A stretch of DNA of 64,000 nt, from contig NC_088797.1 of the NCBI RefSeq assembly GCF_011386835.1, positions 32,612,001 to 32,676,000 of the forward strand. Reading direction: 5' to 3'. The notes beneath the pieces were generated by a model. That model saw only the letters and a list, made by a program, of their open reading frames with translations, was not told the DNA's origin and did not search any database. A program made the position numbers and the translations under genes. This stretch comes from Chrysemys picta bellii (lineage: Eukaryota). Below, one piece after another: positions 10,901-64,000 of this stretch (within the stretch, counting starts at the first letter, position 1; each line of letters begins with the position of its first letter).

Positions 10901-13900
10901 CCCTAGTGGTGTCTTCCCAGCAGACACAGAGAAGTTAGATCAAACCATACGGTCCTCTTGCTGGGAGGCAACACTATTTTAGGTCTCAGGAGTCAGAACA
11001 AGAACCCAAACTCAGAGAGAGACAAAGCAGGCTGCTCCTAAAGCCCAGAGGCACAGTTCACCCACCTTACTTCATGCTGGCTTTCTGCAGACTGACTGCT
11101 GCTAGGCCCAGATCCACGCTTCACTACTGAGCCCCTGCCTGCAAGCAGGACGAGAAAAATCCCTATGAATTTAAAGTGATCACAATCTGAACAGGTTTCA
11201 AGACACCACATCAAGACCCTAGCTGACCTCAAATCCCCTCTTCTCCACGCCCCTTACACTGACCCCAACTTCCTCCTGCACCAGCTCCCTTCTTCAGACC
11301 CCCTCCAACTGCACCAACTCGCCCCAGACCCCACTGCATTAATACGTTTCCCCTCCCTGACCCCCACTGCAATGACCCTGACCCCCCAACCTTCCCTAGG
11401 CTCCTCCCATGCTGGCCCCAATTCCCCCATCCCCTGTTCTCCTCTCCAGCCCCCATCATGTCAACCCCCAACTGCAATGACCCTGACACACACATCCCAA
11501 CCCCCACTAGGCTGACCCCAGCTCCTCCTGCTCTCCCCACAGCGACGTCCAGGTAAACGTCCACAACCAGCGAGTCATCAAGAACTCCTCCAATGTGATG
11601 GGGTTCATCCGGGGCAGCGAGGAACCTGGTGAGTGTCCCCCCCAGAACAACCACCAAGCACCCCCACACCTACCACTACTCCCATTCCCCCAGCCCCCTC
11701 TCCCCCACCCCACAAGCCAGGAGTGTCCCCCACCCTGCCCCATTCACCATACTGGGATCCACCTCTCTCCACGCCCATTCCCCCAACCTCTCATTCTCTC
11801 CCCCTCTCCATGCCCTGGAGCACCCCTCAGTGGGCTCCTCTTCCCCCCATGCCCAAGAGTGCTCCCCAGTGACCCTCAGCCCCACCTTATTGAGCTCCCC
11901 ACCCCATTCCAACACTGCTCCTTTACCATCTGGGCTCACGGGCAGCAAGCTCCCCCCACCACACTCCATCCCAAGCAGACCTCCCCACCCCCGTGCACTC
12001 CCTCCCACACCCCGATCAGCAGCAGAGCTCCGTCTCTCTCCTCGCCCCCCCCAGACAGGTACGTCCTCTATGGCAATCACCGGGACAGCTGGGTGCATGG
12101 AGCCATCGACCCGAGCAGTGGGACAGCTGTCATGCTGGAGATCACCCGCGTGCTGGGCAAGATGCTGAAAGAAGGTATGAGGGTTTGGGGGATGCACCGG
12201 GGTGCAACTATCCCCAGTGCACAGCTAGAGAAACTGAGGCACATAGTGGACTTGCCCTTGAGGTCAGCCAGCACATCAGTGGCAGAACCCAGGAGTCCTG
12301 ACTCTCAGAACCGCCCTGCTCTAACCACTACGTCTGAATCTCCAGGGTGTGTGTTTCTCCACAGGGAAGTGGCGCCCCAGAAGGTCCATTATCTTTGGCA
12401 GCTGGGGGGCTGAGGAGTTCGGTCTGATCGGCTCCACCGAGTACACGGAGGTAAAAACCCAAGAGAGAGGGGGATTGACGGCGGCTCCCCTTTGGAGGGA
12501 ATAAGATGGGAGGGTGGGTGGACATGGCTGCTGCCCCCTGCTCCATCCAAACACCCAGGTATGTGCTGAATGTACTGTAGCTGATCGGGATAGTTACAAT
12601 GGGACTGTCACTCTTGGGAACCCTCCTCTCTGCACCAGACCCATGGGCCCAGCCAGCCCGGATCAGACCCATGCAGCTCACCCGATCCCATTGCACTAAC
12701 CACTGGGCCTCTCCCTTGCCCAGGAATTCTACAGCAAACTGCAGGAGCGGAGTGTGGCCTATATCAACGTGGACATCTCCGTCTTTGGTGAGCGTCCGTT
12801 TGTCCTGCCTGCCCTCCTCCGCTCTTGCTGCACCATCCCCATCTCTGCTTTGTGTAGAAGGGCCGCGACACTAGGCTCAGGCGGGCTTGGGTGTTTGTGG
12901 GGAGGAAGGAATGAAAGGGAGCGTGCGTGCGAGAGTGCATGTGCAATCAGACGGGCACAAGTGCAAGAGCCTGCATGCAACTGAATACGTGTCCGAGAGG
13001 GTGTGCAAGAGTACACTTGCTAGAGGGTGCAACTGAACAGCCATCAAAGGGAGAGCATGTGCGCAAGAGCATGCAATCAGTCGGTGCCAGCATAAACAAA
13101 CGAGAGCTAGGAGCACGCACTAGTGCAAGTGTGCAAAGGTGCTCACAAGAGGGCACTCTCCCCCCAAACGTCAGCGGGTGGCCGAGAGTGCAGGGGATGC
13201 CCGTCTGGCTGTGCTGCAGGTCAGCTGGTGCCCCAGAGCCCTGGGGAGCGGTGGGTCGCCCTGTATGATCCGGCATAGTCCCTAACATTGCCTCCCCCGT
13301 GCTTTCCACAGCCAACGCCACCCTGAGAGCCCAGGGGACGCCGCCTGCCCAGAGCGTCATCTTTGCAGCTGCCAAGCAGGTACCGGGGTGGATGTGTGGT
13401 GGGGGAGGTGCGTGTGTCCATCCCCTCTCCCACTGCAGGGGAGTCTGACTCATGTGCGCCTCTTCTAGGTCCAAACCCCAGCCAGTTCCTCCGTGTCCGT
13501 CTATGACAACTGGAGAAACCACTTCAACCGCATCAGCCCCAGCTACGGCGTCATCCCCAAGTGAGTCCCCAAGTCAGTGGGAGCCGCCCCCCCACTCCAA
13601 GGGTGGATTATAGGGAGTGGGAGGGACAGGAAAGGGGCCAAGATCTTCTCCTCCCCACCTCCTTCTGTGGCTCAGATTGAAGAGAAAGCTTCATTGTTGG
13701 GGGAGTAGCAGATGTGGAGGGGACACTGGGCTGGATGGGCCCCCTGTTCTGATCCACAGCGGGGATACGGGGCTAAACAGGCCCATTGGTCTGATCTGGG
13801 GTGGCAGAGAGGGAGAATACCAGGAGCCTGGGCAACTCTGAACCATGACCCCAGCCACAGAACAAACCAAAGAACATGGGCTTGGGGATCTGCCCCCGTA

Positions 13901-16900
13901 GGCAGGGGCCACATCAGCACAGCAGGAGATGGCAAACTCTGCTCTCCACCCAGGGATGTTTCCCATTCCCGCCCCTCCCCCCTGCCTGGCCCTGAGTCAC
14001 TCACCCCTCTCCATCCCCCGTACAGCTTAGGGTCCCTGGGTGCCGGGAGCGACTATGCCTCCTTCATCCATTACCTGGGTATCACCTCCATGGACATCGC
14101 CTACACCTATGACAGGGTAAGGACACCTGCCGCTCTGGGATGAGCCTGCCTGAGCCACCCCCTCCCGACAGACACGGCCTCAGTCCCAGATCCCTGCCCA
14201 CACGGGGCATTTATTGGGCGCTGGAAAAGAGGCAGGGGGAATGCAGCACTGGGCTATCTTGCTGCTACCCTATGCTCAGTAGGGGGCGCTCTCCCCTCAG
14301 TCAGTGCTGACCCCTGTGCTGTGTCTGGGGGGCACTGTATTGCAGGGAGTAGAGTGGGGGGGCTCAGTAGGGGGCGCTGTCCCTCACAGTGCTGACCCCA
14401 ATGTGAGGCTAGGGAGCAGGGCAGGTGAGTCAAGGGGAGGGTTTGCTGGGGGATCTCAGCTCACTAGGGGAAAGAGGGGGCCTTGGGATCTGCTTTCAGC
14501 TGCTTTGCCCCTTCCCTGCCTTAGAACAAGACATCTGCTCGGATCTACCCTGCCTACCACACGGCCTTCGATACCTTCGACTATGCTGACAGGTTCATCG
14601 ACCCAGGTAAAGGGGCGTGGCATTCACCCTGGGCAGGCATGGGGGCCGAGGTATTGCGAGGGGAGGTTTAGGATGCATCTAATCCCTTTATCCCCATTTG
14701 GCCACAGGGTTCACCAGCCATCAGGCTGTGGCCCGGACGGCTGGCAATGTGCTGCTGCGGCTGGCCGACAGCCTCGTCCTCCCCCTTAATGTGAGCGACT
14801 ACGGAGAGAAGCTGGATGAGCTATACAGCGCAGCCACCCAGGGGGACTTCCTGGACAAACTCAATGCCAACAATCTCTCTCTCGGTACGGGCGGGTGGGA
14901 CTCCTTGGTGCTATCCCCAACAATCTCTCTCTCGGTGCAGGCGGGCGGGACTCCTTGGTGCTATCCCCAACAATCTCTCTCTCGGTGCGGGCGGGCGGGA
15001 CTCCTTGGTGCTATCCCCAACAATCTCTCTCTCGGTGCGGGCGGGTGGGACTCCTTGGTGCTATCCCCAACAATCTCTCTCGGTGCGGGCGGGACTCCTG
15101 GGTGCTATCCCCAACAATCTCTCTCTCGGTGCGGGCGGGTGGGACTCCTGGGTGCTATCCCCAACAATCTCTCTCTCAGTGTGGGCGGGCGGGACTCCTG
15201 GGTGCTATCCCCAACAATCTCTCTCTCGGTGTGGGCGGGCGGGACTCCTGGGTGCTATCCCCAACAATCTCTCTCTCGGTGCAGGCGGGCAGGATTCCTG
15301 GGAGCTATCCCCAACAATCTCTCTCTCAAAGCGGGCGGGTGGGACTCCTGCGTGCTATCCCCAACAATCTCTCTCTCAATGCGGGCAGGCGGGATTCCTG
15401 GGTGCTATCCCCAACAATCTCTCTTGGTGCGGGTGGGCGGGACTCCTGGGTGCTAGCCCCAACAATCTCCCTTTCGGTGCAGGCACGCGGGACTCCTGGG
15501 TGCTATCCCCAACAATCTCTCTCTCGGTGCAGGTGGGCGGGACTCCTGGGTGCTATCCCCAACAATCTCTCTCGGTGCGGGTGGGCGGGACTCCTGGGTG
15601 CTATCCCCAACAATCTCTCTCCCGGTGCGGGTGGGCGGGACTCCTGGGTGCTATCCCCAACAATCTCTCTGTCACTGTGCTGCGTGGTGGGGGCTCAGTA
15701 GGGGGCACTCTCCCCTCTCGGTCAGTGCCAGCTCCAGTGGCCAAGTGCAGTGCTGCTCAGTAGCAGCTGTACTCCTCGCCGGCACTGCTTACCCCACCAT
15801 GGTGCTAGCGGGCGCTGTGCTGCAAGAAGGTGGGCTCAACAATGCTAACCCCTGCCCTAGGGGGCCCATAGCCTGGCTTCTCTGGAGAGCCCAGATTAGT
15901 GTGGGGAAGGTGCTGATGGGGACCATAGGAAGGAGGGGCTGCAGACCTGCTCCCTTACACTTGGTCCTGCCTGCCTTTCAGACCCTTTGAAGGCTGCGAT
16001 TGATCGGTTCAAATCGGTGGCTGCTGACTTCAACCAGCGGATAACGAAGCTGAAGAAGGAGGAGTCTCCGAGGTGAGACCTGTCCCTGACTGCATGTGCA
16101 ATTGCACTGGTGGGTGTCCATGCTGCCTGCCTGCCTCCATACAACTGCACGGGTGCACAGCCTGGAGGCACGGTCCTGCAGGGAGTGGTCACACGTATTA
16201 GCATGTTCACATACACATGCATGGCCAAGCTTGTGCAAACATGCCACCTGTGGGGGTTGGGGAGTCTCCCCTATCTACAAAGGGCACGTGATCCTTGGAC
16301 CCAGGGAAGAAGGGGGCTGTTGTCCTTAGTGGAGACCCCTCTGGGAATGGAACTTGGATGGGGGGTCTCTTCCAGTCCTCTAGAGAGGGAAAGGTAGGGA
16401 CAAAGTCACAGGCCTGGAGAGCAGTAGGCAAGGCTTGATGAGATGATAGCGCCCCCCACAGGGCATCTGATGTAAGGGGGTCCCTAATCCTACTCTGGTC
16501 TCTCCTTCCCACCCACCCCAGTCCTCTGCAGATCCGGATGGTGAATGACCAAATAATGCTGCTGGAAAGGGCCTTCCTCAACCCCCAGGCCTTCCCCAAC
16601 AAGTACTATTACAGGTAATGCCATCTGGGGGGCTGGGGAGGACACCTGGGTTCCATTCCCAAGCGCCCATCCTCACCAATCCCTGGTGGATCCTGATTGA
16701 AATGTGCTGGGTGAAAGGGCATCAGCAAGAAAATGAAGTGTAGGAGGGGCGCGGGGTGTAGTAGTTAGAGAAGAGGGGTCTGGAGTGGGGATTAGGGCTT
16801 ACAGCCAAGGGGCTAGGAGTTGGGACTCCTGGGTTTTATCCCCAACTCTGGAAGGGGAGTGGTGTCGAGTGATTCAAGCATGGGGGGGCTGATATTCGGG

Positions 16901-17215
16901 ACACCTGGGATCTATTCCCAGCTCTGCCGTTGATTCCCTGCATAACCCTGGGGGAGCCACTCCACCTCTCCATGCCTCAGTTTCCCCATGTGTATCACAG
17001 TGCTAACATGATACTGACCTCTCCCATTCTCTTTCCAACCCCTTAGCCATGTGATCTGGGCGTCCAAATCCTCTGACCAGGCTACCTTCCCAGGACTGGC
17101 TGATGCCTACACCAATGCCCTGGAGACAGGGGACTGGGACCAAGTCCGGAAGCATCTCACCATCGTTGTGCAGGCTGTGGAGAGCGCTGCCTCCACCCTG
17201 GAAGCCGTGGCCTAA
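4978..17215 (+). CDS. NAALADL1: N-acetylated alpha-linked acidic dipeptidase-like 1 (ileal aminopeptidase, M28 family), 19 coding exons, 748 aa
   Basis: Exons 4978-5201, 5594-5766, 6214-6332, 7431-7553, 8197-8386, 9087-9180, 10663-10767, 11543-11628, 12055-12174, 12365-12450, 12724-12787, 13312-13379, 13469-13560, 14026-14116, 14525-14606, 14708-14884, 15982-16072, 16522-16614, 17047-17215. All introns are GT-AG and the total is 2247 nt in frame. N-terminal TM anchor ending LGHFAIPK; [15 protein letters not shown]; metal/catalytic motifs [31 protein letters not shown] all intact. Confidence 0.97.
6500..7290. repeat. Degenerate tandem array in NAALADL1 intron 3
   Basis: Recurring ccaacagccatgtatcccagagacaaacagcc modules; ~6640-6770 is duplicated at ~6980-7110. 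Confidence 0.7.
9335..9500 (+). mobile_element. MIR/CORE-type SINE
   Basis: tRNA-like head (gggttctattcccggctc) followed by the CORE gtgaccttggacaagacacttcccctctttgtgcctcagtttccccatct. Confidence 0.75.
9579..9593 (+). promoter_or_regulatory. CTCF consensus site in NAALADL1 intron 6
   Basis: gCCACTAGGTGGCGa matches the CTCF core CCASYAGRKGGCR exactly; binding is not shown. Confidence 0.5.
14867..15670 (+). repeat. 50-bp VNTR (16 units plus a partial unit) beginning inside NAALADL1 exon 16
   Basis: Unit ccaacaatctctctctcggtgcgggcgggcgggactcctKggtgctatcc; 17 copies of the caacaatct core counted. The first copy is the exon end plus the real donor at 14885. Confidence 0.95.
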
Positions 17216-22479: not shown

Positions 22480-22890
22480 TCCCGATGCCACCTGCCACCC
22501 TCACTGCTGGGATCCCTCCCCTGGCTCCACTCCCCACCTCACCTGCCCCCACCCCACACTGCTGAGATCTCTCTGCCAGCCCCACCCGTAGCCTGTGCTC
22601 CCCACACCACCTCCCCCCCCCTAAATTGCTGGGATCCCTCCTCCATCCCCATCCCCCGCCTGTGCTCCCACAACCCTGCCTCCACCATCCTGTACCTCCC
22701 ATGCTGCCGCCTCCCTCCCCTACTGCTGGGATCCCTCCCCCATCCCCATCATTTCCTGTGCTCCCCACACTGCCTGCCTCCCCCACTGCTGGGATCCCTA
22801 CCGCATCCCCAACCCTGGCCTGCACTCTCCGTGTCATCTGCCTCCCCCACTGCTGGGATCCCTCCCTGGCCTGCACTCCCCACACTCTCC
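22480..22890. repeat. C-rich ~45-bp degenerate tandem repeat in the PROX 3' UTR
   Basis: Repeated cctcccccactgctgggatccctcccc modules; similar modules occur at ~23420-23540 and ~27970-28260. Confidence 0.65.
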
Positions 22891-23070
22891 CAATGAAACC
22901 TCCTCTGATATGTGTGGGGAGGATAATTTTGAAAAGTGGGTGGTGTCAAGGCCACCCCTACCTCAGCCAGCAACTTAGCGACATAGTGGATCACATCAGC
23001 AATAAATTACCAGAGCCCTCCTCCCTTGTCCCCCGCCAAGGACCCCAACTCTGCAGCACCCCTCCCCCAG

Positions 23071-26000
23071 TCACTCATGCACAGTGTCCGGCAGGCTGTG
23101 GGGGGATTTGAAGGCATCGGGGATGTCGCACTCCAGTTTGCAGATAACCTTGTAGATGGATTTCTTCCAGGAGGGGTCAGCATCACAGCCCCGGGAGATG
23201 GCACTAAAGAACTCACGCAGGGTGATCTGGGAGACCTCCAGGAACTTGCTGGGGATCTGGGTGGGGGGAAAAAACACAAGGGCATCACCCCATTAGGACT
23301 GGTGAAGCCTGGCTCAGGAGGGGTTTTAGCGGGGCTCTTTTATTCCTCCCCCAAGGTCAGTTTCCTCTTGTCAATTGCTCCCATGCTGCCAAGATCACCC
23401 CAGGCCTGCACTCCTCACCTCAGCCGGGATCCCTCCCCTGTGCTCCCCTTCCCATCCACTTGCCCCACTGACGGGGCCCCTCCCAAATCTCCACCCGGTC
23501 TGTGCATCCCACGTTGCCTGCCTCCCTGCTGCCGGGTCCCCTGCCCACCTCGTAGTCATTGGCTTTGTTGTAGTGCTGGTTGAGGACACGTGCCAGCTCT
23601 GAGTCCCGGGTGACAGTCAGCGTCTCGGCGCTGAGCACCCCATCGCTCAATGCCTGGCGTGAGAACTTCTCCATCTGGATGTAGAAGAACTCCCGGAAGT
23701 TGCTGAACCACTTGATGAGCTGGGACGTGATGCAGCGATTGAACTAGGGGGACGGCAAGAGGAGAGAGACATTGCCATCAACACAGCCCTGGGCCTCAGT
23801 CCCCCAGTACACTGAAAACAGAGGAGTGACCCACCTTCTCTGCCCCAACTCCCTGGGAAAAGGGGGGTCCGATCGCCCCTCCCTGCCCCCCAATTCCCTG
23901 CAAACAGGGGTCCAATCCCCCTTCCTGCCCTCCAACTCTCTGGGAAAAGGGAAGTCTAATCCCCCCGTGCTGTCCCCTATGACTCTGGGAAAAGAGGAGG
24001 CTGATTCCTGTTCTGCCCATTCCCTGGCAAGGACGGGTTGTGATCCCCCCGCATCTCTCGTCACATGATCTACCTAAGTGTCTGTTTCTGGCAACAGGGT
24101 CAGTGGCGGGGAAGGGGCAAGGGACCCTCCCTCCACGGATGGATGCTGCTAGAGGACCTGCATGGGCCATATAGAAGGGGGCCTGGATCCATGGGGAGGG
24201 TCCATGGTCAAACTGTCCCAGAGTTGGGGAGGTTCTGAGGGACCCACCTTGACGTCGGAGAAATAGGTCTTGAGCGTCCCGGAGCTGGGATAGCGAGTGT
24301 AGAAGAACATCAGCTTGGCCTTCTTCAAGTGCCCAGGGGTGAGGCCCTCCTGGGAATGACGGGGTTAAGGAGCAACCAGGGGAAGGGCTATAATGGGGGC
24401 ACCTCAGTTGAAGGCCCTCCAGAGAGCAGACCCCCCCCCCGCCCCAAGAAAGCAGTGACCGCTGCCCACGAGCTGAGAATAGAACCCAGGAGAGTCCTGA
24501 CTCCCAGCCCCTCCTCCCCATTGTACCCCACAAATCTCACCTCTCAATCTCTTATCCCTGCCCCCGCAGCTCGGCTCAGGCAGTCAAGGGAGAGGGGGCG
24601 TCAGTGGAGGACAGGTTGTGTGTGTGGGGTGAATATGTGTGGAGCAGTGTGTATGGGGGCTTTCAGGGGAGGGGGCAGCATGGGGGAGGCAGTCGGGGGG
24701 GCAGTGTGTAGGGCGGGGGCTAGTTGAGGGAGGGGGCAGCATGTAGGGCGGGAGCAGGGCCGGCTCCAGGCACCAGCTTAACAAGCAGGTGCTTGGGGTG
24801 GCCAAGGGAGAGGGACGGCACCAGCGGCAATTCGGGGCGGCAGGTCCCTCACTCCCTCTAGGAGCGAAGGACCTGCCGCTGAACTGCTGCCGCCGATTTT
24901 TTTTTTTTTTTTTGCTTGGGGCGGCAGAAATACTGGAGCCGGCCCTGGGCGGGAGGCAGTCAGGAGAGGGGGCTGCGTGTAGGGCGGGGGGCAGTGTGTA
25001 TGCTGGAGGGCAGTCAGGGGAGGGGGCAGTGTGTAGGGAGGGAGGAAGTTGAGGAAGGGGGCAGTGTGTAGGGAGGGACGAAGTTGAGGGAGGGGGCAGT
25101 GTGTAGGGCAGGAGGCAGTTGGGGGAGGCGGCAGTGTGTAGGATGGGGTACAGCGGTGGGAGGGGACAGTGTGTAGGATGGGGTACTGCGGAGGGAGGGG
25201 ACAGCGTGTAGAATGGGAGGCAGTCGGGGGAGGGGGCACTGTGTAGACCACGGGGCAGCAGGGGGAGGGGGCAGCGTGTAGAGCAGGGGACAGCAGGGGG
25301 AGGGGGCAGAGTGTAGGGTGGGAGGCAGCCGGGGGAGGGGGCAGCGGGAGTGTCTTTGACAGTCCACCCCCACTAATCCTGAGGATTATTCCCAGCAGGT
25401 GCCTAGCGCGTTTCAGGAGGAAGCTGTTTCTGAGCTGATGCAATCAGCTTAGGGTCCGCCTCAGCCTGGTTAACCATTAAACCTACCCCAGGCCTCAGGG
25501 GACTAGCGGTGGGTGGGTGGTGTGGGGGGAACAGGTGATGCTAACACCTGCCCTGCCAACGCCTCACAGGTGGCAGCAAGATGTGAGCAGGTGTGGAGTG
25601 GAGCGGAGCGGAGCGGGGCAGGGCCGGAGGGGGTGGGGGGGCTGGCTGAGCTGATGGCAGGGCTGTCAGTGTATGGGGTGTGCGGGAGGTGGGGGGACAG
25701 GAGTGTGTGTATGGGGTGTGTGTGTATGCAGCATATGGGCCAGGGGAGGGAGAAGGAAGAGGCTGTGCGGGGATGTCCGGGTCAGTACGTGTATATGAGG
25801 CAGGGGCCAGTGTGTGGGTCTATGGGAAACAGTGTGTGTATGGACGGTGAATGTGTGTAGGTTGGTTTGGGGAAGGGTGTGTGGGGGGGGTGGGTCAGTG
25901 GAGGATAGGTTGTGTGTGGGGTGAAAATGTGTGGGTTAGTTGGGAGCAGGGTTTGGGGAGGCAGTGTGTATGTGTGGGTTGGGGGGCATGGTGTGTGTGT

Positions 26001-26215
26001 GTGTGCATGAGGAGTGAATGTGTGTGGGTTAGTTCAGAGCACAGTGTGGGGGTCAGAGGGGGTCAGACTGTGTGAGTGGGTCAGGATGTGCATGGGGGTG
26101 AATGTGTGTGGGTTAGTTTGGGGCAGAGTGTGGGGGGCTGGGCACGTATGAGGGGGGTGAACGTGTGTGGGTTAGTTGTGGGCAGGGTGTGTGCATGGGT
26201 CAGTGGGGGACAGGA

Positions 26216-26246
<31 letters not shown>

Positions 26247-27338
26247 TGTGGGTTAGTTGGGGGCAGGATGTGTATGGGGGGAAGGGATCAGACCCTCTCC
26301 CCACTCTACCCCAAGTCCTGGCTGGCTACTAAAGGATATTGAGGGCTTGTAGAGGGCTGGCTCCAGGCCATGGTGCGTCTCTGTGGCCTGGCTCTTGGGG
26401 AGCTGGCGCTCAGTTGGCCCTGCCAGCTGGAAGAGGGCACAGTGTGGCCGCAGCAGGTGGCGTGAGGACAGCTTGGTGCGCAGGCTCACACCCTCCCAGT
26501 AGGCCTCTCCCGCTGCTCTGTCCTTGAAGGCTGCCACGTATGGTGGAACAGCCATGGGCTGGGGGAAGGTGCCGGCCACCAGCTCAGGGGTGGCACGGGG
26601 CAGGCTCTTCCTCACCACTAGAGGAAGTGCCTCTGTCTGGTCACTTGGGTAACTGCAGGGGGGCTCCTCCGGTGGGGGTTGCTGGCGGGCAAACACCTGC
26701 ACGACCGTGTCCACCACCTGGGTCATGGCTGCTCCAAGCTCCTCCTTCAAGGCCTCGGCCAGGGTGCCAGGGTGCCTACTCCCTCCCCCAGGACGCTGGG
26801 TGCTGGCTCCAACTCTTCCTGGCTCCTGGGACCAGGCTGCCCCCACGTTGCTTCCTTCCTCTTGGGCCACCCCGCTGTAGATCTGGCACAGTTTCTCCTG
26901 CAGCTGGAACACTTGCTCACGCATCTTCTCCAGCTGCTGCTTGAGCTGGCTCCGTTCCTGGGCCCGGCGGGAGCGGCCGTACCTGGTGCCCCCTTCTTCC
27001 AGGCCCCCATCACGGTACGAGCTGCTGATGCTGCACACAATGTTCTCTACCCGGGCCCGCTTGGCCCAGGCAAAGTCCTTGGCACCTTCTGGATCCAGAC
27101 CCCTCTTCGCCGGGACCTCCCTGTCCCCCTGGGAAGACTCGCCCGAGTCACAGGCCTCTGCCAGCTTGGCCTTCACACTCCTGCGCAGCCATTGGGAAAT
27201 GAGATCACTGTCAGGGTAAGGGCCTGCCATGTCACCACAGCCCCTAGGTTGGTTCTGGAGGCTTAGCTGGTAGGCGGGGCCCTCCAGCTGCTGCTCCTCT
27301 AGCCGCTCCAGCTTGAGATTGGTTCCGGAGAAGGACAT
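23071..27338 (-). CDS. Prospero-family homeobox transcription factor, divergent PROX1-like paralogue (PROX3-like), ~493-495 aa
   Basis: Exons 27338-26340, 24355 (or 24349)-24248, 23743-23549 and 23256-23071. Family motifs: PYPDSDLISQWLRR, AKRARVENIV, LKQQLEKMREQVFQLQEKLCQIY, LKEELGAAMTQVVDTVVQVF, DQTEALPLVVRK. Homeo-prospero domain HLKKAKLMFFYTRYPSS...FNRCITSQLIKWFSNFREFFYIQMEK...DPSWKKSIYKVICKL...HE*. Confidence 0.93.
24600..25345. repeat. G-rich ~30-bp minisatellite in the PROX U12 intron
   Basis: Unit approx. ggggagggggcagtgtgtagggcgggaggcagt, repeated either side of the MITE. Confidence 0.85.
24755..24947. mobile_element. Non-autonomous hAT DNA transposon (MITE), 193 bp
   Basis: Perfect 15-bp TIRs CAGGGCCGGCTCCAG / CTGGAGCCGGCCCTG and an identical 8-bp TSD GGCGGGAG at 24747-24754 and 24948-24955. 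Confidence 0.93.
25640..26285. repeat. GT-rich degenerate repeat with a (GT)n microsatellite
   Basis: Recurring tgtgtgggttagttgggg modules; pure (TG)n at ~26216-26241. Confidence 0.75.
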
Positions 27339-30300
27339 CGTTGTTGGGAGTCTGCAAAAAAGATTGGACGCATGGGAGTTGGGGAGCCTGCCGTGCACCG
27401 TGCTCCCTCCTGCAGCACAGCGCCCCCAGTACTGCTCTGGGGCATTAGGGTCAACATTGAATACAAGGGGAGAGCCCCCCTACTGAGAACCTGCCCCACT
27501 CCCTGCAGCACAGCGCCCCCTAGCACCACACTAGGGCATTGGGATCACCACTGATGGTGAGGGGAGAGCGCCCCCTACTGACTCCCCAACCTGCTCCTTC
27601 TTTGGCTTTTCTCAGTGGATCCCACTCTGCGTGGGGGGAGGAGGGGGAGGTCTGTCTCAACCCCAACCTAAGCATGGGGCAGAAGCAGGGAAGGGGTTAA
27701 TACAGCTGGCTTGTGCAGAGATCCCAGCTGGTGGACCTTGGGCTGGCAGGTTGGGGGAGGGTACAGGGCCATTTAAGGGCTGTAGGCAGAGGTGCCAGTG
27801 GGGCAAAGGTTCCCTTCCCCCCCCACAGCAAACTCGCCCCCTCCTCCCCCCATGGTCCCTGGCCAAAACAAACAGATCCCTGGCTGCTCCCTGAGAAGGC
27901 AGCTGGGAGACGCGTGTAGGCCTGATGCAAACCTAACAGCTCCCTGTTCTGCACCACACACAGTGCCCCCAACCCTCCACAACTCCCACATCCCCTGCTG
28001 AGATCCCTGTCCCCACATCCACCCAGGCCTGAGCCATGGCAGACCTCCCAGTTCCCACTCTGAGAGGGCCCTGTCCCCCTTCCAGCAGCCCCCCTCCAGC
28101 CTTACCTCTGCTGAGATCCCCTCACTGCCCTAGGCTGTGGCAGGCCTCCCTGCTGAGATCCCTGCCCCCCATGCCTGGGCTATGACAGCCCCACCTTGAC
28201 CCCCTCCAACCCCTCCGGTTGAGATCCCTGTTCCCCAGTGATCCCCCAGGCCTGGGCTAGGCAGCTCTCGCCTCAGGCCCCCCTCCCCGACTCCTACATG
28301 GCCAGGATGCTGCTCCCCATTTTGTTAACCTGACACAAGAGTGCAACCACCCCTCCTTGCTGCCCGCTCCCAAAACCCTTGGAACAACTACTAGGAATAG
28401 GCTGTGTCATGGGTAGAAAGCAGGAGGCTGGGGCAACGGGCACCTAACAACCCCCACAGTGTTGGCTGGAGGGGGGCAGCACCAGGATTCTGGGATCTGT
28501 GGCTCTCACTCTGGCTAAACTTTATGGTAAACAGACAAACCCTCTGCCTCCCTTCTGCCACCTGTGCCTCCCCCAAACCAGGCCCTGCCTCCCCCAGCAT
28601 CCTCCAGCTGTCTCCCCCAAGCCAGCCCCTGCATCCTCCCACCCAGACCCTGCTTCCTTTCAGCCCTCCTACATCCTCCACCCAGACCTTCCCTGCTCCC
28701 TTGTATTTCCCACCCCAGATTTCCCCTAACCCCCTGCCTCCAAGCCTCTTCCTGCACCCCCCATCCAGCCCCCTACAGACCTCCACCCAGAGCTTCCTAC
28801 CCCCCAGTCCTCCATCCCCTCTGACTCCCCTAATCACCCCAATCCCCCAGCCCCTCTGCAACCCTGCTTCATCCCCTGCACCCCACCCCCAGACCTTCCC
28901 TGGCCCCAAACCCTGAGCATCACCTGACCCAGACTCTGCACCCAACTCCCAGCCTTCCCCTGCTCCCTGCATGCCAACCTTTATATTCCAATTCCAGCTT
29001 CTCCTCACCCATACCCTGCCTCCCCTCAACTCCCCCACCCTGCTCCTGAACCCCCATGCCCTCTGTTCCTCCCCTCCCCAGCATCTCTGGGGTGCCCTGA
29101 AAGTCCCCAGTTGACTCTGCCCCTTTTGCCCATGCTGGCACCTGAAGGCAGGTGCCAGGGGCAGATGATATTCTGACTCACCGCTTGGCAGGTGCCCACC
29201 CTGAGGAGAGCCCCTGAGCCCCGATCCCTGATGCCAGCTAGTCTCTGCCACACTGATTGACAGAGCCTGGAAGGACCTGGGTCATTCCTCTGGTGACATC
29301 ACACCACGGGGACACAGCCCCACGTGGGGGGAGGGGAATGCCAGTAGCAGGGGAGGAGCTGAACCATGATTGGGCAGAGGGTTATCCCCTTGTCAATCCT
29401 GGGCCAGAGTGGGAGGAGGGACAAGCTGGACCCAGATGCCAAAAGGAAGAGCCAAGTCCTGGAGACCAGAAAGGGAGAAGGAAATGCTAGGAAATAAGTG
29501 AACACAGGAACCCACTCCCCTCCCAGAACTGAGGAGAGAACTCAGGAGTCCTGACTCCCAGCCCCCCTGTTCTAACCCATTACACCCCACTCCCTTCCTA
29601 GAGCTGGAGGGAGAACCCAGAGTCCTAACTCCAAGCTCCCACCCCTGACCCTGTCCCACCAGAACCCACTGCACTTCCAGAGCTCGGATAGAACCCAAGA
29701 ATCCTGAGTCCCAGCTGCCCCCGTCCCCAAACCCTTGGCTAAGTCAGGTGGCTACAACCCTCGCCTCCCAGCTGCCACTCTGGGGTGCTGTAAATCACAC
29801 CATAAATACAACGGTACTTCCCCTGGGGCAGCTGGCAGCTGGGGCAGCCTCGGAGCAGGAAGGGACCTGCCAGAATCCAAGGGGACACAGAGTGAGAGTG
29901 TGTGTGTGTGTGTGTGGGGGGGGGGGTAAGGGGTCAGGATCAATGAGACCCAGGTGGGGTGGGGGAGAGGGAATCAACAGGGTCTGGGGGGTCCTAGATG
30001 GTTGGGATCTGTGGAGTCCCAGGAGGAGGGAAGGGGACAGGGAGAATTGCAACCTAAAACTGACATTTATGGGACAGCTGTTCAAACAGACAACCCCCTC
30101 CCCTAAACACATGTATCCACTCACATTCAGACACCCTCCTCGTGCACAACCACACCCAGTGCTCACAGCCAGGTGTACCCACACCCCCTCACATAGGGCC
30201 CGCTATCCAGCTGCCCCCGCTCCCCACCTTGAATGGGGACAGAACCCAGGCTTCCTGCCTCCCAAGCCCTGCTGTTCCAACTATAAGACATCACTCCCAT

Positions 30301-34109: not shown

Positions 34110-35878
34110 TTAGCTACAGGTATCTTCGATGACCTCCAGCAGGGGGGCCTCCCCTCGTTTACTGTCCACTAGCAGCTGCGAGGGGCCGTGGACCAGCATG
34201 CCTGGGTCCCTGAAAGCTGCTTTCTGGAAGACCACAGCTCCATCCAGCACCGTGAGCCCATGATGGCGGCACAGCTCTGCCATCTCCTCAGGGCTGTCCA
34301 CTGCCAGCAGCCGGGCGAGCCAGGTCAGAGGGCAGCGACAGTTCCTGGCACTAAAGCCGTGGCTAAAGGTGAGCAGTGCCAAGCGCCGGGCGGGGCCCAG
34401 GTGCCGATGGAGGGCGCAAATTGGCAGGTAGGGCAAGGCCTGCACCAGGCGGAAAAACCGTGCCCAGTTGCGCTCCAGGTAAGCCCAGTTGACAGCCAGC
34501 GCTGTGCGGAGTTCAGGGGAGGCCCGGACAGGGTCTGGGAGCTGCAGGACCTGGCGCAGAGCTTCCGGGAAGCCTAGGGTGGAAAAGGGGCAAATCAGAG
34601 CAGCGCCCCTTGCTGAGCCCCCCACGGCTGCTCCTTGCAGCACAGCACCCCCTGCTGAGCTCCCCCCCCACTCCCTGCAGCACAGGGCCCCTACTGAGAT
34701 CCCCCATCCTGCTCCCTGCAGCACAGTGCCCCTCCCTGACTACATGCCTCTCTCCCTGTCATCTGGCTCCCTCTGAGCCCCTTGCACCATTCTCTGCAGT
34801 CCAGCACCCCCTACTGAGCCCTCTGTGCCATCCCATGCAGCACAATGCCCTCTTCTGAGCCCGCACTTCTCCCTGCAGCACAGCACCCCCTACTGAGCCC
34901 CTGCTCCCTCTCTGCAGCCCAGCGTCACCCACTGATCTACCCACATTGCTCCCTCCTAGCACCGCACTGGGGTCAGCACTGACTGCCAGGGGAGAGTGCC
35001 CCCTATTGAGCCCCTGACCCTGGTCTCTGTGGCACAGTGCCCTCTACTGAGCCACCACGCTATTCCCTGCATCACAGTACCCCCTGCTGAGCAACACGGC
35101 CCACTCTCTGCAGCACAGTCCCTCCTACTGAGCAATGCATGCAGCACAGTGTGCCCTACTGAGCAACTCACCCTGCCCTATGCAGCACAACGCCCCCTAC
35201 TGACCCCCTCCTACTCCCTGCAGCACACCACACACCTCCCCCCAATTCTGCCTGCAGCACAGCGACCTCTACTGACTCCCCCTCCTGCTTCCTGCAGCAC
35301 AGCACCCCCTAGTGCTGCTCACCCAGGTTGTAGAGGAGGAAAAGGGCCTGGAAGGCCGGCTCCCCGTGATGACAGCTGTCCTGGTAGCAGCGCCGCAGCC
35401 AGCTGAAGCACTCCTGGAGCTGGGTGCGATGGAGGTGGGGGTCGAAGCGGGCAGGAGTTTCCTGGCACAGCTGGTAGCCGGCATGGAGCAGGTAGCCCAG
35501 TGATCGCTCCAGCAGGGCCACGCATGGAGCCCCTTGCAGCCGCTGCAGCGTGGCATCCTGGCGCACAGCACGCAACCGGTCGGAGATGAAAGCATGGACC
35601 TCAGCTGGGGGCAGGTCGGCTTGAGGCGCCACCTGGCCCAGCAGGTAGCGCACAGTGGCCAGCAGCACTGGGGCAGGGCGCAGCTCCTGGGGCCGGGGCA
35701 GCTCCTTGCCAGCAGCTGGACGGGAATACTCCTTCACCACGCGGGCAGGGTCACCCTGCCGCGTCCCCTCCCGCAGCTCCAGCCGGTGCAGGCGGCCCTG
35801 GCGCTCCCGCTGTGCCAGCTCACCCAGCGGGCACATCCCAGGGCATGTGCCCACTGGGAACTCATCTGCACCCCCCAT
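34110..35878 (-). CDS. SAC3D1: SAC3 domain-containing protein 1, 2 coding exons, 339 aa
   Basis: Exons 35878-35323 and 34573-34110, joined in phase 1 by a GT-AG intron; the acceptor at 35890 implies a further upstream exon. Motifs PVGTCPGMCP, LHRLE, VKEYSRPAAGK, ELRPAPVLLATVRYL, FISDRLRAVRQD, FQALFLLYNLG, RFFRL. Adjacent to SNX15. Confidence 0.95.
34598..35315. repeat. ~40-bp tandem repeat filling the SAC3D1 intron
   Basis: About 15 copies of ctgcagcacagcRccccctactgagcccc...ctcc; the same unit is dispersed at ~14250-14390, 15670-15830, 20320-20410 and 27400-27585. Confidence 0.85.
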
Positions 35879-36329
35879 TGGCCAGGCACCTGCAGCAGAG
35901 ACAGAGAGTGAGAGGATCTGGGCGTGGGGGGAGGGGAGGTCGGGGGTTCCAGTAGTGTGTGGGGTGAGATGAGGAGAATCAGGTCCTCCCTGTGGGGACT
36001 CTGAGGAGGGGCAGGTCTGAGGTAAGGGCCCCTCCTTGTGGGGCCTGGTAGATGGGTGATCTGAACTACGCCTCTGCTGGGTCCTAGGAGGAGACATGGG
36101 GTCAGGGCTGTCCCGGTGGGAGAACTTGACCAATCCCAGCAGCCCCCCCAAATTATATCCTCCTCCCCCCACAGACCTGCCCAATGCTAGGGATAAACTC
36201 CAGGACTCCTGACCCCTCAGCCCCCCCTGCTCTCACCACTAGACCCCACTCTCCTCCCCGCGCTGAGACTAGAGCCCAGTCGCCCCTCCCCCCAACCGGG
36301 GAGCCTTCCCTGGGTCCCACAATGCCCTA

Positions 36330-39384: not shown

Positions 39385-42300
39385 TCATGGCTGGAGATGG
39401 GTCAGCTGGACCAGCTCTTCGGCCCGATGTAGATACTCGGCTGTCTTCTTCTTCACTGCTTCCCGGCGGGCAGGATCGGGGTCTCCTGGGTAGGGAGAGG
39501 AGAAATGAACAGATGTGCCCATGACTGTAAGCAATGAGCTGGCTCCCTGCACTGAGCTATGGTGCTAGCCGACTCCTCCCTGCAGTGAAACGTATGACAC
39601 TGAGGCCTTGTCTCTCCAGCTGCTAGCACAACAGGGCAGGGTGACTGCTAGTGCTGCTTGAGGGCAGCTAATCCTTCAGTGCCTTTCCCCAATTCTTCCT
39701 CGTCCAGGTGCCTGTAAAGGACAGACAGGTTCTCCCCCAATTCACTAGAAAAGGATCACAGCCACTCAGCTTGCTGTGGTAATAAGGACTATAGGATGCC
39801 TCCCTGAAATCTTAGCACCTCCCAAGAGCGAGGCAGACGCATCAACTGAGGTGAGGCTAACAATTCGCATGCAATCACAGAGTTAACTCCGCAGGGAAGA
39901 CCTGCTCTTGGAGAACGGTGGCCAGGAGACATTGTCTCAGCATGCTGCCAGCTGGTCCCAAAGGACTGGTGCATGTCTGGGCTGAGGACCAGGGATTTCA
40001 GGACCAAGACTCAGACCTCCAAACTCAGTGACATCTCGAGAAAGCAGCTGTGGGTTTGTTCTTTACGCCGAACTGTTTGGCCACAACAGCCCAGACTAAA
40101 TGTGGAAGGATCCACACTGCTGTTAGGTAGCCTGAGTTAATTTGCAACCACCTGGGGAAACAAAAGGCCCTCAAGGATCAGGGAAGGGAAAAGATGGCCA
40201 AAAAGCCACAGCAAAATCTGTGCTTAAGCCAAAGAGGAAGTGGCAGCCCTGGCAAAGGGACAGGATCAATCTCACACCCTGGGTAACCTTAATATTGGAT
40301 CTTCCTCCCGCCTGACAGCAGGCTGAGGGTGGCTGGCTCATTGGCAACACCCAGCTGCAGCTGGGGAGCTCTTTGGGGTAGGGACTGCCTGTTCCGTGGT
40401 TGTGCAATACCTAGCACACTGGGGTCCTGCTCCAGGACTGGGGCGACCAGATGCAGCCTCATTAGTGGTTACGGGTCAGGAGAAGGGAGGACCACGCTGA
40501 ACTTCGGGGCCTCTCTTTGTCTGGCTGGAATGTGGGAACTTATGAAAACTGACCACTTCCCAGAATCGCTGGGAATGGTCAAGGCACCAGCACCCTGCTG
40601 AACTGGGGACAAGCAAACCCTGATTTTCACTAGAAAGCAGTCCACTTGGTGCGGCAGGCAGAGGCTCTCTGGTGCCCTCTGCTGCCACCTACACACATCA
40701 CAGGCAGCAGCTCACCAGAGGGCCATACACTTCACTGCTCATGCAGGCCAAGCTCTGTGTTATCCAACTTCTTATGTGCTAATGGAGGATCGAGGTGAGG
40801 GGTCCAGCTGGGGGAGGAGGGGCTGGGTGGGTGTGAGGGGTGGTAATGGTCAAAGGCCCTGTCTGGGCAGGGGGCTGGACACAGTGGGGGCAAATGAGGG
40901 GCTAGCCAGCAATGGGGAGGGGCTACTGGCTATACAGTTTGGCCTACCTATGCCATGAAGGGTGCAATGCTCTGGTAATAACAGCGCTGGCCCAGGCCAA
41001 TCCCCTCTCACATCCCTGCAAGCGAGCGGGTTGGCTGTGACATGGGGAGGGTTGTTCCACTGCAGCTTGTGAGAGCTGCCCCAAGTCCCTGCTTAGGGTG
41101 ATTTAGGGGACACACACACCTTTAGAGAGGGGGCCAAGTGCAGCCTGATGGAATCAAGGCCTGTGACTCCGCTCTATGGGGGGGGGGGGGGGAAGGGAAA
41201 ATCAATGGAGGTAAGACACCGCTGATGGGAGGGAGGGTTCTGAATGCAGACACTAATGGGCAGGGGGCTAACAGCTGCCATGACACACAAACATCTCTGG
41301 GAGAGCAGGGGAGAGAGCTGGGAGTCAGGACTCCTGGGTTCGATGCCAAGCTCTGGGATGGGAGTGAAGTCCAGTGGTTAAAACAGGGGGCTGAGGGCCA
41401 GGACTCCTGCATTCTGCTCTGGCTGTGCTGCAGACTTCATGCCATGCCTTGTGGGGGACGTCACTAACCTTCTCTGTGCCTCACTTTCCCCTCTATGCTA
41501 TGGAGGGTACTGGTTTATCAATGAGGTCAGACCAAGAGGTTCCCCCACCCCTCCAAGTACCTTGCACCCCCTTCAGCAGGATGTCCACCCCATTGCGGTA
41601 GCCACAGAGGGCCCCTGCGTAGTCTTTGGCTGCTTCTCTCTTCAAGGCCAGTGTGATCTCCTCAGTGGCCACTGCCAGGTACCCTCCTGGGTCCAGTCCC
41701 TGTATTGCCTCCTGCTCCGCAGGCTGAGAGATCTGCAGGTCCCACAGGGCATCAGCCGCCAGCTCAATGTCCTGGCCGGGGAGCAGCTCTGATCCCACGG
41801 CCAACATGGCCCCCTGGGAAGGGCTGGCTGAGCATTGCTCTGAAAGCACAAAGTATGTGTGTGTGTGGGGGGGAGGCACGTTAGAAGGGAGCAGGGACCC
41901 CATGCCGGCTTCATGAGACTGAAACCCTCCATTCCCCTCTCCCACTATGGTGAGCACCAGGCAAGATTCCCACCCCTGCACCCTCCAAATGGCCTGAGCC
42001 TGCCCAGCTCCTAGAGGAGAAAGCCTCCATCTCCCACTCCCCTGAGCCAGCCAGTGCTCCCACCCTGGGACTGGATCAGAGCTGGCGTCCCCTAGAGATG
42101 ACCCAGACCCATCTAACCCCCTCCTACCTTCCTTGATGAAGGGGTCAAAGAGGGCCAGGTCCTGGTTAGACAGGGGGCCGTGGAGAGGTGACCCGCTCTC
42201 CTTCTCCTCCCCCACCGAGGCAAAGAGCAGATCCAGATCCTCCTCGGATTTAGCAGCCAGTGCAGGGTCCCCTGTGAGCCAGGCACAAAGCACAGGAGAA

Positions 42301-63187: not shown

Positions 63188-64000
63188 TTAGTACGTCTGG
63201 GCATACTGAGTGGCATAGCCGTTGCTGTATTTCTCATAGTACTCCCCTGCACTGTAGGTGGCACCCATGCTGTACTGGGAGTAGGTAGCTGCTGCTGCGG
63301 CTGCAGCCGCCACTGCTGCATAACCCGTTTGGTTGTACACTTGACTGTATGTCTGGGCAGCAGCCGCGGCAGCATAGGGATCAGTATACTGGGCCACCGC
63401 AGCAGTCGTCCGCCTGCCCACAGGGCTCCTCTCTCTGTAGGCGGTGGGGGTAGAGGGCGGAGGTGGCAGGGCCCTCTCGTATGCTGTCCTCGCAGTCATC
63501 GCCCGGTCGTAGAGCTCATAAGCATAGCGGTCATAATATTCCCGGTCATACCAAGATCGGGGTGCATACGGGGTGTATGGAGGCGGTGGCGGGGGGATGC
63601 GCCCCCTGGGGAAGTAGTAACTGGGCAGTGCAGGTGGTGGAGGTGGCACAGAGGTCCCCTTGGTTGTCTTGAGCGAGTTGTTGCTCTTGGACAGTGTTAC
63701 AAAGATCTTCTGGTCCTCCAGAGGCATGTCATTGAGGTTCAAGATGGCGTCCATGGCTTCCCTCTCCTTGGCCATGTGGACAAAGGCGTAGTTCTTGACA
63801 ATGTCACACTCCACCACCTTGCCAAACTTCTCAAAGAGCTCCTTGATCTGGGCTGTGGTGGCCTTGCTGGAGACATTGCCCACATAGATCTTGGTGGCGT
63901 TACGGATCTTGGAGGTGGCGTACTCTACCGTCAGGTGGGCCCCGTAGAACTCCTGCTTGTGCAGCTCGCTGATGGCCTTGTGGGCCTCGTCCTCCTTCTC
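63188..64000 (-). CDS. RBM4/RBM14 (lark)-family RNA-binding protein with two RRMs, 5' end beyond the window
   Basis: The frame is open from 64000: EKEDEAHKAISELHKQEFYGAHLTVEYATSKIRNA (end of RRM1), TKIYVGNV...VVECDIVKNYAFVHM (RRM2). It continues into a Pro/Tyr-rich region, a YRERSP motif and Ala-rich tracts. There is no CCHC knuckle. Confidence 0.85.
   Translation of the reverse strand, partial: EKEDEAHKAISELHKQEFYGAHLTVEYATSKIRNATKIYVGNVSSKATTAQIKELFEKFGKVVECDIVKNYAFVHMAKEREAMDAILNLNDMPLEDQKIFVTLSKSNNSLKTTKGTSVPPPPPALPSYYFPRGRIPPPPPPYTPYAPRSWYDREYYDRYAYELYDRAMTARTAYERALPPPPSTPTAYRERSPVGRRTTAAVAQYTDPYAAAAAAQTYSQVYNQTGYAAVAAAAAAAATYSQYSMGATYSAGEYYEKYSNGYATQYAQTY

What the first reader, a model, noticed from the sequence alone, without database searches (positions are those of the whole stretch)
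23071..27338. Intact third-type prospero gene (PROX3-like) between NAALADL1 and SAC3D1
The gene is complete and in frame with all family motifs. The homeo-prospero domain has PROX1-type residues (FFYTRY, KTYFSDVK, SQLIKW, QITLREFF, IYKVICKL, terminal HE), but the protein is only ~495 aa and far too divergent outside the motifs to be the highly conserved PROX1. The neighbourhood is that of neither PROX1 nor PROX2 as I recall them. Mammals have only PROX1 and PROX2, while teleosts have an extra gene (prox3/prox1b). An intact amniote copy would mean this paralogue persisted in reptiles with an unstudied role.
Basis: partly seen in the sequence, partly recalled or inferred. Interest (0 to 1): 0.85.

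Follow-up and report, generated by a model that had tools for sequence, protein, structure and literature searches.

The report
Turtle Prox3 gene, thought lost in tetrapods
This turtle DNA carries an intact, expressed and selectively conserved third prospero-type transcription factor gene (Prox3), a paralogue that the newest study of the family says was lost in all four-limbed vertebrates.

Summary
On the minus strand, 23071-27338 holds a complete 495-aa prospero-family coding sequence in four coding exons. A non-coding first exon lies near 29.2 kb.

Evidence that it is Prox3:
- The last three exons cover the whole Pfam homeo-prospero domain.
- Spliced transcript contigs from four runs (three turtle organisms, four studies) join the coding exons exactly where expected.
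- In two IQ-TREE analyses it groups with salamander genes, then lungfish, then ray-finned-fish prox3 (gar "prospero homeobox 3").
- AU tests reject a clade with PROX1 (p 6e-10) or with PROX2 (p 1e-13).
- Turtles also have ordinary PROX1 and PROX2.
- Its neighbours are the published Prox3 neighbourhood: SNX15-like and SAC3D1 upstream, NAALADL1-like convergent downstream.
- dN/dS among three turtle lineages is 0.22-0.26, and 0.09-0.13 in the DNA-binding domain.

A very divergent 321-aa alligator gene lies at the same place. A September 2026 preprint states that Prox3 was lost in tetrapods; these data contradict that. RefSeq already models the gene, but names it "PROX1-like".

The intron before the domain is a U12-type intron spliced AT-AT. 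Tissue of expression and molecular function were not tested. This scan had noted the same stretch before (s1-322497, s1-322508), not other DNA.

The parts
29182..29268 (-). Non-coding first exon (5' UTR). The 3' end is exact; the 5' end (TSS) is not mapped, and at least about 87 nt are present.
   Evidence: Contig X1 record 6 continues 87 nt past the exon-2 acceptor. Those letters match the window only at 29183-29212. A GTGAGT donor follows at 29181.
27352..29181 (-). Intron 1, GT-AG
   Evidence: Donor gtgagt at 29181; acceptor ttttttgcag ending at 27352. The joined form is in an X1 contig.
26340..27351 (-). Exon 2: 13 nt of 5' UTR plus codons 1-333 (ATG at 27338). It encodes the N-terminal region with the family's conserved blocks.
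   Evidence: Contigs of four runs cover 26340-27338/27352. Alignment with PROX1 and Prox3 proteins.
24356..26339 (-). U12-type intron, 1984 nt, spliced AT-AT. Donor ATATCCTTT; branch-site motif TCCTTAAC 8 nt before the 3' end.
   Evidence: Joint 24355|26340 with ends AT..AT and no positional ambiguity, in all four runs.
24248..24355 (-). Exon 3, 36 codons (SQEGLTPGHLKKAKLMFFYTRY...DVK): start of the homeo-prospero domain
   Evidence: Pfam HPD profile 1-33, E 1.2e-15; joints.
23744..24247 (-). Intron, GT-AG
   Evidence: Joint 23743|24248 in four runs.
23549..23743 (-). Exon 4, 65 codons: homeodomain recognition helix (SQLIKWFSNFREFFYIQMEK)
   Evidence: Pfam HPD profile 34-98, E 2.3e-33.
23257..23548 (-). 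Intron, GT-AG
   Evidence: Joint 23256|23549 in four runs.
22700..23256 (-). Last exon: 61 codons plus stop (23071-23256), then 3' UTR that runs at least to 22700. That is the end of the stretch I laid reads on; the poly(A) site is not mapped.
   Evidence: Pfam HPD profile 99-152, E 2.2e-20. X6 and X9 contigs reach 22700.
9821..17050 (+). Downstream convergent neighbour, NAALADL1-like (only part of the gene, approximate bounds)
   Evidence: Peptidase_M28 hit at 11595-12413. The stretch is collinear at 82-92% identity with the Chelonia gene that carries PA, Peptidase_M28 and TFR_dimer.
34110..36184 (-). Upstream neighbour SAC3D1 (two SAC3_GANP exons)
   Evidence: Pfam PF03399, E 3e-56 and 1e-28, covering profile 1-180 and 176-287.
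41493..42395 (-). Exon with an MIT domain, probably SNX15
   Evidence: Pfam MIT, 22.3 bits, which is below the 30-bit cut-off. In alligator the gene model just upstream of the orthologue carries PX plus SAC3_GANP.
51460..51792 (-). Arf-family exon, ARL2-like
   Evidence: Pfam Arf, E 3e-23.

Best explanation
This is the turtle orthologue of Prox3. Prox3 is the third vertebrate prospero-related homeobox paralogue, known from ray-finned fishes (zebrafish "prox1b") and lungfish.

Shown here:
- The gene is a five-exon transcription unit on the minus strand, with four coding exons.
- It is transcribed and fully spliced, including a U12-type AT-AT intron just before the homeo-prospero domain.
- It encodes a 495-aa protein.

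Inferred:
- The protein acts as a sequence-specific nuclear transcription factor of the Prospero/PROX1 type. Its C-terminal homeo-prospero domain is about 74% identical to PROX1 in the alignment, and its recognition helix differs from PROX1's by one Tyr-to-Phe change.
- Its N-terminal region keeps the family's conserved blocks: ISQxL, AKRARVENI, the coiled-coil QLKQQLE..QLQEK..QIY, LAEALKEEL..QVVD.VV, DQTEALPLVVRK and SLRTK. It lacks the roughly 45-residue N-terminal extension of PROX1.
- The gene was inherited vertically from the bony-vertebrate ancestor. It was kept in turtles, crocodilians (very divergent) and salamanders, and lost separately in other tetrapod lines.
For: Domain: Pfam HPD spans three exons contiguously. 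PDB 2LMD (human PROX1 HPD) matches at E 1.9e-82, and Prospero structures 1XPX and 1MIJ at about 1e-57.

Expression: spliced contigs in X1, X9, X6 and X5 cover three organisms and four studies. One 1916-nt contig spans all coding exons. Exon depth is about 108-146 against 2.5-15 in introns in X1. The large exon is held at 80% of sampled words or more by 14 transcriptome-sized runs, one of them on record as RNA-Seq. Other runs listed under the same studies or species label hold almost none of it.

Phylogeny: turtle plus salamander 100/99; plus lungfish 99/95; plus actinopterygian prox3 97/90; whole Prox3 clade 97/88. This was repeated with the RNA-supported protein and with turtle PROX1, turtle PROX2 and lungfish PROX1 added; the Prox3 clade then had 96/88. 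AU tests reject a clade with PROX1 (delta lnL 85.7, p 6e-10) and with PROX2 (delta lnL 85.5, p 1e-13).

Synteny: SAC3_GANP gene, then the HPD gene, then a convergent PA/M28/TFR_dimer gene in Chelonia and Carettochelys. Gar prox3 has the same convergent downstream gene. The window shows the same order plus MIT and Arf exons upstream. The preprint 10.64898/2026.09.25.754218 gives Snx15 upstream and Naalad/Naaladl downstream as the Prox3 synteny.

Selection: NG86 dN/dS is 0.26, 0.22 and 0.23 for the three turtle pairs. For the HPD it is 0.09-0.13.

Gene structure: the U12 intron is at the same position in gar prox3 (AT-AC) and in alligator (AT-AC).
Against: - No experiment shows DNA binding, nuclear localisation or any phenotype.
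- Run ids and sample descriptions are coded, so the tissue and stage of expression are unknown.
- The contigs are assemblies, not raw reads. I inferred that they are RNA from the missing introns and the run sizes. Only one holder is on record as RNA.
- The stem branch to turtles is long (about 0.6 changes per site, against about 0.01 for PROX1), so function may have shifted.
- The ISQLL nuclear-receptor-box-like motif reads ISQWL in all turtles examined.
- The order of the three subfamilies is unresolved in my trees.
Confidence: 0.9

Rival explanations
1. A lineage-specific duplicate of PROX1, as its RefSeq name "PROX1-like" suggests, that diverged fast after landing between NAALADL1 and SAC3D1.
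For: RefSeq names it PROX1 or PROX1-like. Its HPD is 74% identical to PROX1, no lower than to gar prox3.
Against: The AU test rejects a clade with PROX1 (p 6e-10). It groups with salamander, lungfish and fish Prox3 in species-tree order. The same neighbours occur in gar. It shares the REFFY signature of Prox3 proteins. The introns are retained, so it is not a retrocopy.
Confidence: 0.03
2. A Prox3-derived gene that is transcribed but decaying: a unitary pseudogene in the making with no maintained function.
For: It evolves much faster than PROX1. The alligator orthologue has shrunk to 321 aa and has a terminal branch of 2.5. Most tetrapod lineages appear to have lost the gene.
Against: The reading frame is intact and 493-495 aa long in Chrysemys-like, Chelonia, Pelodiscus and Carettochelys turtles; a partial 378-aa Emydura (side-necked turtle) model is also annotated. 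dN/dS is 0.22-0.26 overall and about 0.1 in the HPD. Splice sites are conserved and used.
Confidence: 0.05
3. A divergent PROX2 orthologue. The alligator copy is in fact annotated as "PROX2".
For: The RefSeq name of the alligator protein P0158.
Against: Chelonia and Alligator each have a separate PROX2 inside a 100/100 PROX2 clade. The AU test rejects a clade with PROX2 (p 1e-13).
Confidence: 0.01

Closest known systems
Prox3 of ray-finned fishes and lungfish (gar "prospero homeobox 3" P0142; Denticeps, Salmo and Cyprinodon prox3; zebrafish prox1b, renamed prox3 in preprint 10.64898/2026.09.25.754218; Protopterus P0032)
   Same: Same clade in the trees. Same convergent NAALADL-like gene downstream, and SNX15 upstream as reported for Prox3. 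Same four-coding-exon layout, with a U12 intron before the HPD. Shared REFFY in the recognition helix.
   Different: Shorter (495 aa against 610-756). Only 30-34% identical outside the HPD. The intron's 3' end is AT rather than AC. It is in an amniote, where the family was reported absent.
PROX1 (mammals, birds, turtles; human HPD structure 2LMD)
   Same: The homeo-prospero domain is 74% identical. All N-terminal conserved blocks are shared. It presumably has the same mode of DNA binding.
   Different: It is a different paralogue, at a different locus. It is 240 residues shorter, lacks the PROX1 N-terminal extension, and evolves far faster.
Drosophila Prospero (structures 1MIJ, 1XPX)
   Same: The HPD is recognisably the same domain (E about 1e-57). 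From my own knowledge, not tested here: the prospero gene also has a U12-type intron at the start of the homeodomain region.
   Different: A very distant orthologue of the whole vertebrate family. The N-terminal regions are unrelated in length.

Membership tests
Prospero/PROX family | Complete homeo-prospero domain (Pfam PF05044) | tested here: met
   Profile positions 1-152 of 154 are covered by three consecutive exons, each above the 25-bit cut-off. PDB 2LMD matches at E 1.9e-82.
Prox3 subfamily | Phylogenetic placement with named fish prox3 and lungfish Prox3, outside PROX1 and PROX2 | tested here: met
   Clade support is 97/88 and 96/88. AU tests reject the PROX1 and PROX2 alternatives.
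Prox3 subfamily | Conserved synteny: Snx15 upstream, Naalad/Naaladl downstream (as defined in preprint 10.64898/2026.09.25.754218) | tested here: met
   NAALADL1-like gene downstream and convergent. SAC3D1, an MIT exon (SNX15-like, below the Pfam cut-off) and an Arf exon lie upstream. A PX+SAC3 gene model lies upstream of the alligator copy. Gar prox3 has the same downstream gene.
Prox3 subfamily | Coexistence with separate PROX1 and PROX2 genes in the same lineage | tested here: met
   PROX1 is present in Trachemys/Terrapene and Mauremys and PROX2 in Chelonia and Caretta. I did not check this in the window's own assembly.
Prox3 subfamily | Functional gene: transcribed, spliced and under purifying selection | tested here: met
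   Spliced contigs in four runs. dN/dS 0.22-0.26.
Prospero/PROX family | Sequence-specific DNA binding and transcriptional regulation | not testable with these tools
   Inferred only from conservation of the HPD and its recognition helix.
PROX1 orthologue group | Falls within the PROX1 clade and is about 737 aa, highly conserved | tested here: not met
   AU p 6e-10 against. The protein is 495 aa and 36% identical to PROX1 outside the HPD.
U12-type (minor spliceosome) introns | Donor /ATATCCTT and branch-site TCCTTAAC close to the 3' splice site | tested here: met
   Donor ATATCCTTT at 26339. TCCTTAAC lies 8 nt before the 3' end at 24356. The AT..AT joint is seen in four runs. Use of the minor spliceosome itself was not tested.

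The most novel reading that the evidence does not exclude
Prox3 was not lost at the base of tetrapods. It survived in at least three lineages: salamanders, turtles and crocodilians. It was lost independently in mammals, squamates, birds and frogs. In turtles it has a maintained function that PROX1 does not cover. A horn-shark gene (Heterodontus P0147) at the base of the clade would also undo the reported cartilaginous-fish loss. Together these would rewrite the loss history in the only dedicated study of the family.
Probability: 0.8. Interest if true: 0.65.

Novelty: new member of a known kind. Interest (0 to 1): 0.6.

Why it matters
PROX1 is a master regulator of lymphatic, lens, liver and neural development. 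How its paralogues share or back up its roles is an open question.

The only comprehensive study of the family is a September 2026 preprint. It concludes that Prox3 was lost in tetrapods, and it uses the overlap between PROX1 and Prox3 to explain repeated loss.

An expressed, constrained Prox3 in turtles and salamanders changes that picture, as does a rapidly diverging copy in alligator:
- The number and timing of losses change.
- It gives natural contrasts: a retained copy, a degenerating copy and lost copies among close relatives.
- Prox3 function becomes testable in a genetically tractable tetrapod (axolotl or Pleurodeles).

It also shows that the RefSeq names (PROX1-like, PROX1, PROX2) hide the gene's identity.

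Tried and rejected
Splice models:
- Gene model with a GT donor at 26490 (the 443-aa form, as in the old Chelonia model P0002): not seen in any of the four runs.
- RefSeq isoform P0001, with an AT-AG splice (KPS|EGL) and an alternative N-terminus: that acceptor is not seen in the runs. The contigs use the acceptor 6 nt upstream.

Look-ups that gave nothing:
- Locus look-ups for Pelodiscus P0006, Dermochelys P0005 and shark P0147 found no record.
- The shark isoform P0288 was found, but no DNA was served and no neighbour lies within 10 kb. Shark synteny is therefore untested.
- The search for SNX15 PX-domain exons among ten long minus-strand ORFs at 43.7-53.4 kb found none. It found an Arf exon instead.
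- The search of earlier findings by the words PROX1, PROX2 and prospero found nothing.
- Literature searches for prox3 or prox1b together with turtle, alligator, reptile or salamander found no paper that describes a tetrapod Prox3.

Not attempted or not possible:
- Structure prediction and complex prediction were not run. The domain matches solved structures by sequence.
- I could not search bird, squamate, frog or mammal genomes for relics. No vertebrate genome collection is offered.
- I did not determine the window's species. It differs by one residue (Pro for Ser in GLD-P-EG) from the Chrysemys picta bellii model in exon 2.
Full report
**1. What is in the sequence**

Minus-strand ORFs in 23071-27398 carry prospero motifs. 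Reading the strand and translating it gives four coding exons:
- 27338-26340 (333 codons)
- 24355-24248 (36 codons)
- 23743-23549 (65 codons)
- 23256-23071 (61 codons plus TGA)

The product is 495 aa. The three short exons hit Pfam PF05044 (homeo-prospero domain, HPD) at profile positions 1-33, 34-98 and 99-152, so together they make one complete domain. By sequence the domain matches the solved human PROX1 HPD (2LMD, E 1.9e-82) and Drosophila Prospero (1XPX and 1MIJ, about 1e-57).

**2. It is a real, spliced transcript**

I laid the contigs of four small, transcriptome-sized public runs on 22700-27800. The runs come from three coded turtle organisms and four studies.
- All four runs show the same three joints: 23256|23549, 23743|24248 and 24355|26340.
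- One 1916-nt contig spans all coding exons.
- In X1, exon contigs have depth about 108-146, against 2.5-15 for intron contigs.
- A further 87 nt at the 5' end of one contig match the window only at 29183-29212. They sit next to a GTGAGT donor, so there is a non-coding first exon about 1.8 kb upstream.
- The large exon alone is held at 80% of sampled words or more by 14 such runs, one of them on record as RNA-Seq. Other runs listed under the same studies or species label hold almost none of it. That suggests expression specific to tissue or condition.

Run descriptions are coded, so I cannot say which tissue. Apart from that one run, the runs are RNA by inference, from the missing introns and the run sizes.

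**3. The intron before the domain is U12-type and spliced AT-AT**
- Its donor is ATATCCTTT (26339).
- TCCTTAAC lies 8 nt before the 3' end.
- The contigs place the 3' end at 24356, with ends AT..AT and no positional ambiguity.
- This gives ...YKPS|SQEGL..., as in the Chelonia and Pelodiscus models.
- The AT-AG splice of RefSeq isoform P0001 and the 443-aa form that uses the GT donor at 26490 were not seen.
- The orthologous intron is AT-AC in gar prox3 and in alligator. It is AT-AT in Chelonia. In the Carettochelys gene model it is GT-AG (GTATCCTTT...CAG).

**4. What it is related to**

The N-terminal exon finds 84-100% identical "prospero homeobox protein 1(-like)" models in Chrysemys, Chelonia, Dermochelys, Pelodiscus, Carettochelys, Emydura and Chelydra. 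The next hits are salamander proteins (Ambystoma, Pleurodeles; 34-35% identity, E about 1e-30), well ahead of anything else.

The reverse search with the newt N-terminus returns salamanders, then turtles. Frogs, caecilians, squamates, birds and mammals give only PROX1.

An exhaustive HMMER search of 50%-identity representatives ranks lungfish "PROX1-like" (P0032) directly after turtles.

**5. Phylogeny**

An HPD-only FastTree put the turtle genes with newt, lungfish, gar "prospero homeobox 3" and teleost prox3.

A careful IQ-TREE run (56 proteins, 668 columns, LG+C20+F+G4 PMSF) gave these supports:
- turtle plus salamander: 100/99
- plus lungfish: 99/95
- plus actinopterygian prox3: 97/90
- plus a horn-shark protein: 97/88
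- PROX1: 100/97
- PROX2: 100/100

A second run used the RNA-supported 495-aa protein and added turtle PROX1, lungfish PROX1, turtle PROX2 and alligator PROX2. It gave the same picture, with the Prox3 clade at 96/88.

AU tests reject forcing the turtle and salamander genes together with PROX1 (delta lnL 85.7, p 6e-10) or with PROX2 (delta lnL 85.5, p 1e-13).

The branching order among the three subfamilies is not resolved here.

**6. Separate PROX1 and PROX2 in turtles**

The 90% cluster of PROX1 contains Trachemys/Terrapene and Mauremys proteins of 736-737 aa. PROX2 is present in Chelonia and Caretta. I did not check the window's own assembly.

**7. Synteny**

In the window:
- A Peptidase_M28 exon (+) lies at 11.6-12.4 kb.
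- SAC3_GANP exons (-) lie at 34.1-36.2 kb.
- An MIT exon (-) lies at 41.5-42.4 kb. It is below the Pfam cut-off.
- An Arf-family exon (-) lies at 51.5-51.8 kb.

In other species:
- The Chelonia locus is collinear with window 9.8-37.0 kb. It is annotated as a SAC3_GANP gene, then the HPD gene, then a convergent PA/Peptidase_M28/TFR_dimer gene.
- Carettochelys shows the same order.
- Gar prox3 has the same convergent downstream gene.

This is the Prox3 neighbourhood described in preprint 10.64898/2026.09.25.754218: Snx15 upstream and Naalad/Naaladl downstream. From my own knowledge, not tested here, human 11q13.1 has NAALADL1, SAC3D1, SNX15 and ARL2 in this order with nothing prospero-like between the first two.

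**8. Selection**

Nei-Gojobori dN/dS on CDS taken from the window, Chelonia and Carettochelys:

| Pair | dN/dS | Nd | Sd |
|---|---|---|---|
| window vs Chelonia | 0.26 | 35 | 38 |
| window vs Carettochelys | 0.22 | 75 | 89 |
| Chelonia vs Carettochelys | 0.23 | 88 | 96 |

The HPD alone gives 0.09-0.13 and the N-terminal region 0.27-0.33. The gene is constrained, though much less than PROX1.

**9. A crocodilian copy**

P0158 is a 321-aa Alligator mississippiensis protein annotated "PROX2".
- It groups with the turtle genes (97/100) on a very long branch of 2.5.
- It lies directly after a PX+SAC3_GANP gene model. An older model fuses it to SNX15/SAC3D1.
- It keeps the AT-AC U12 intron.
- It has lost most N-terminal blocks.

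Prox3 therefore persisted to the turtle-archosaur ancestor and beyond.

**10. How it probably works (inferred)**

The alignment shows the following.
- The recognition helix (SQLIKWFSNFREFFY) is identical to PROX1's except for one Tyr-to-Phe change. Newt, lungfish and gar Prox3 share that change.
- The N-terminal blocks shared with PROX1 are retained: AKRARVENI, the coiled-coil segment, LAEALKEEL..QVVD, DQTEALPLVVRK and SLRTK.
- The PROX1 N-terminal extension is absent.
- The ISQLL motif reads ISQWL in turtles.

The most likely function is a PROX1-like nuclear transcription factor with possibly altered cofactor binding. None of this was tested.

**11. Comparison with the literature**

The September 2026 preprint by Panara et al. 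finds Prox3 only in actinopterygians, one lungfish and cyclostomes. It states that Prox3 was lost in tetrapods, coelacanth and chondrichthyans. No held paper links prox3 or prox1b with turtles, crocodilians or salamanders.

The gene models exist in RefSeq under misleading names. What is new is the identity and the evolutionary implication, not the existence of an ORF.

**12. Verdict**

This is a new tetrapod and amniote member of a known subfamily. It is of moderate to high interest to people who work on PROX genes and vertebrate gene-family evolution.

Noticed in passing
window 24356-26339 (-); L001, L002, L003, L004: The terminal dinucleotides of this U12 intron differ between lineages. They are AT-AC in gar prox3 and alligator, and AT-AT in the window's turtle (seen in RNA contigs). 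Chelonia has the same AT-AT splice-site sequences. The Carettochelys gene model has GT-AG. This is a subtype switch within one orthologous intron.
   Followed up: partly
L004:10001-12364 (Alligator mississippiensis), proteins P0158 and P0373: The alligator has a 321-aa, very fast-evolving Prox3 orthologue, annotated as PROX2 and in an older model fused to SNX15/SAC3D1. The gene downstream of it is EHD-like, not NAALADL1-like.
   Followed up: partly
protein P0147/P0288 (Heterodontus francisci, 508-509 aa): A horn-shark "PROX1-like" protein sits at the base of the Prox3 clade (97/88 and 96/88) on a long branch. The same shark has a PROX2-clade protein (P0145). If this is real, Prox3 was not lost in all cartilaginous fishes. 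Its synteny could not be checked.
   Followed up: partly
window 24752-24922: This stretch inside the U12 intron has summed contig depth 500-25,000 in all four runs, with many contigs that run on into unrelated sequence. It is probably a widely transcribed interspersed repeat. The rest of the intron (24.8-26.25 kb) is a G/T-rich low-complexity region on the + strand (GC skew +0.37).
   Followed up: no
window 14867-15679 (+): This stretch matches a 520-nt segment of the Chelonia NAALADL1-like gene many times at offsets of about 50 nt.
   Followed up: no
window 63188-63883 (-): An ORF with an RRM_1 domain (E 1e-12) lies at the window's end.
   Followed up: no
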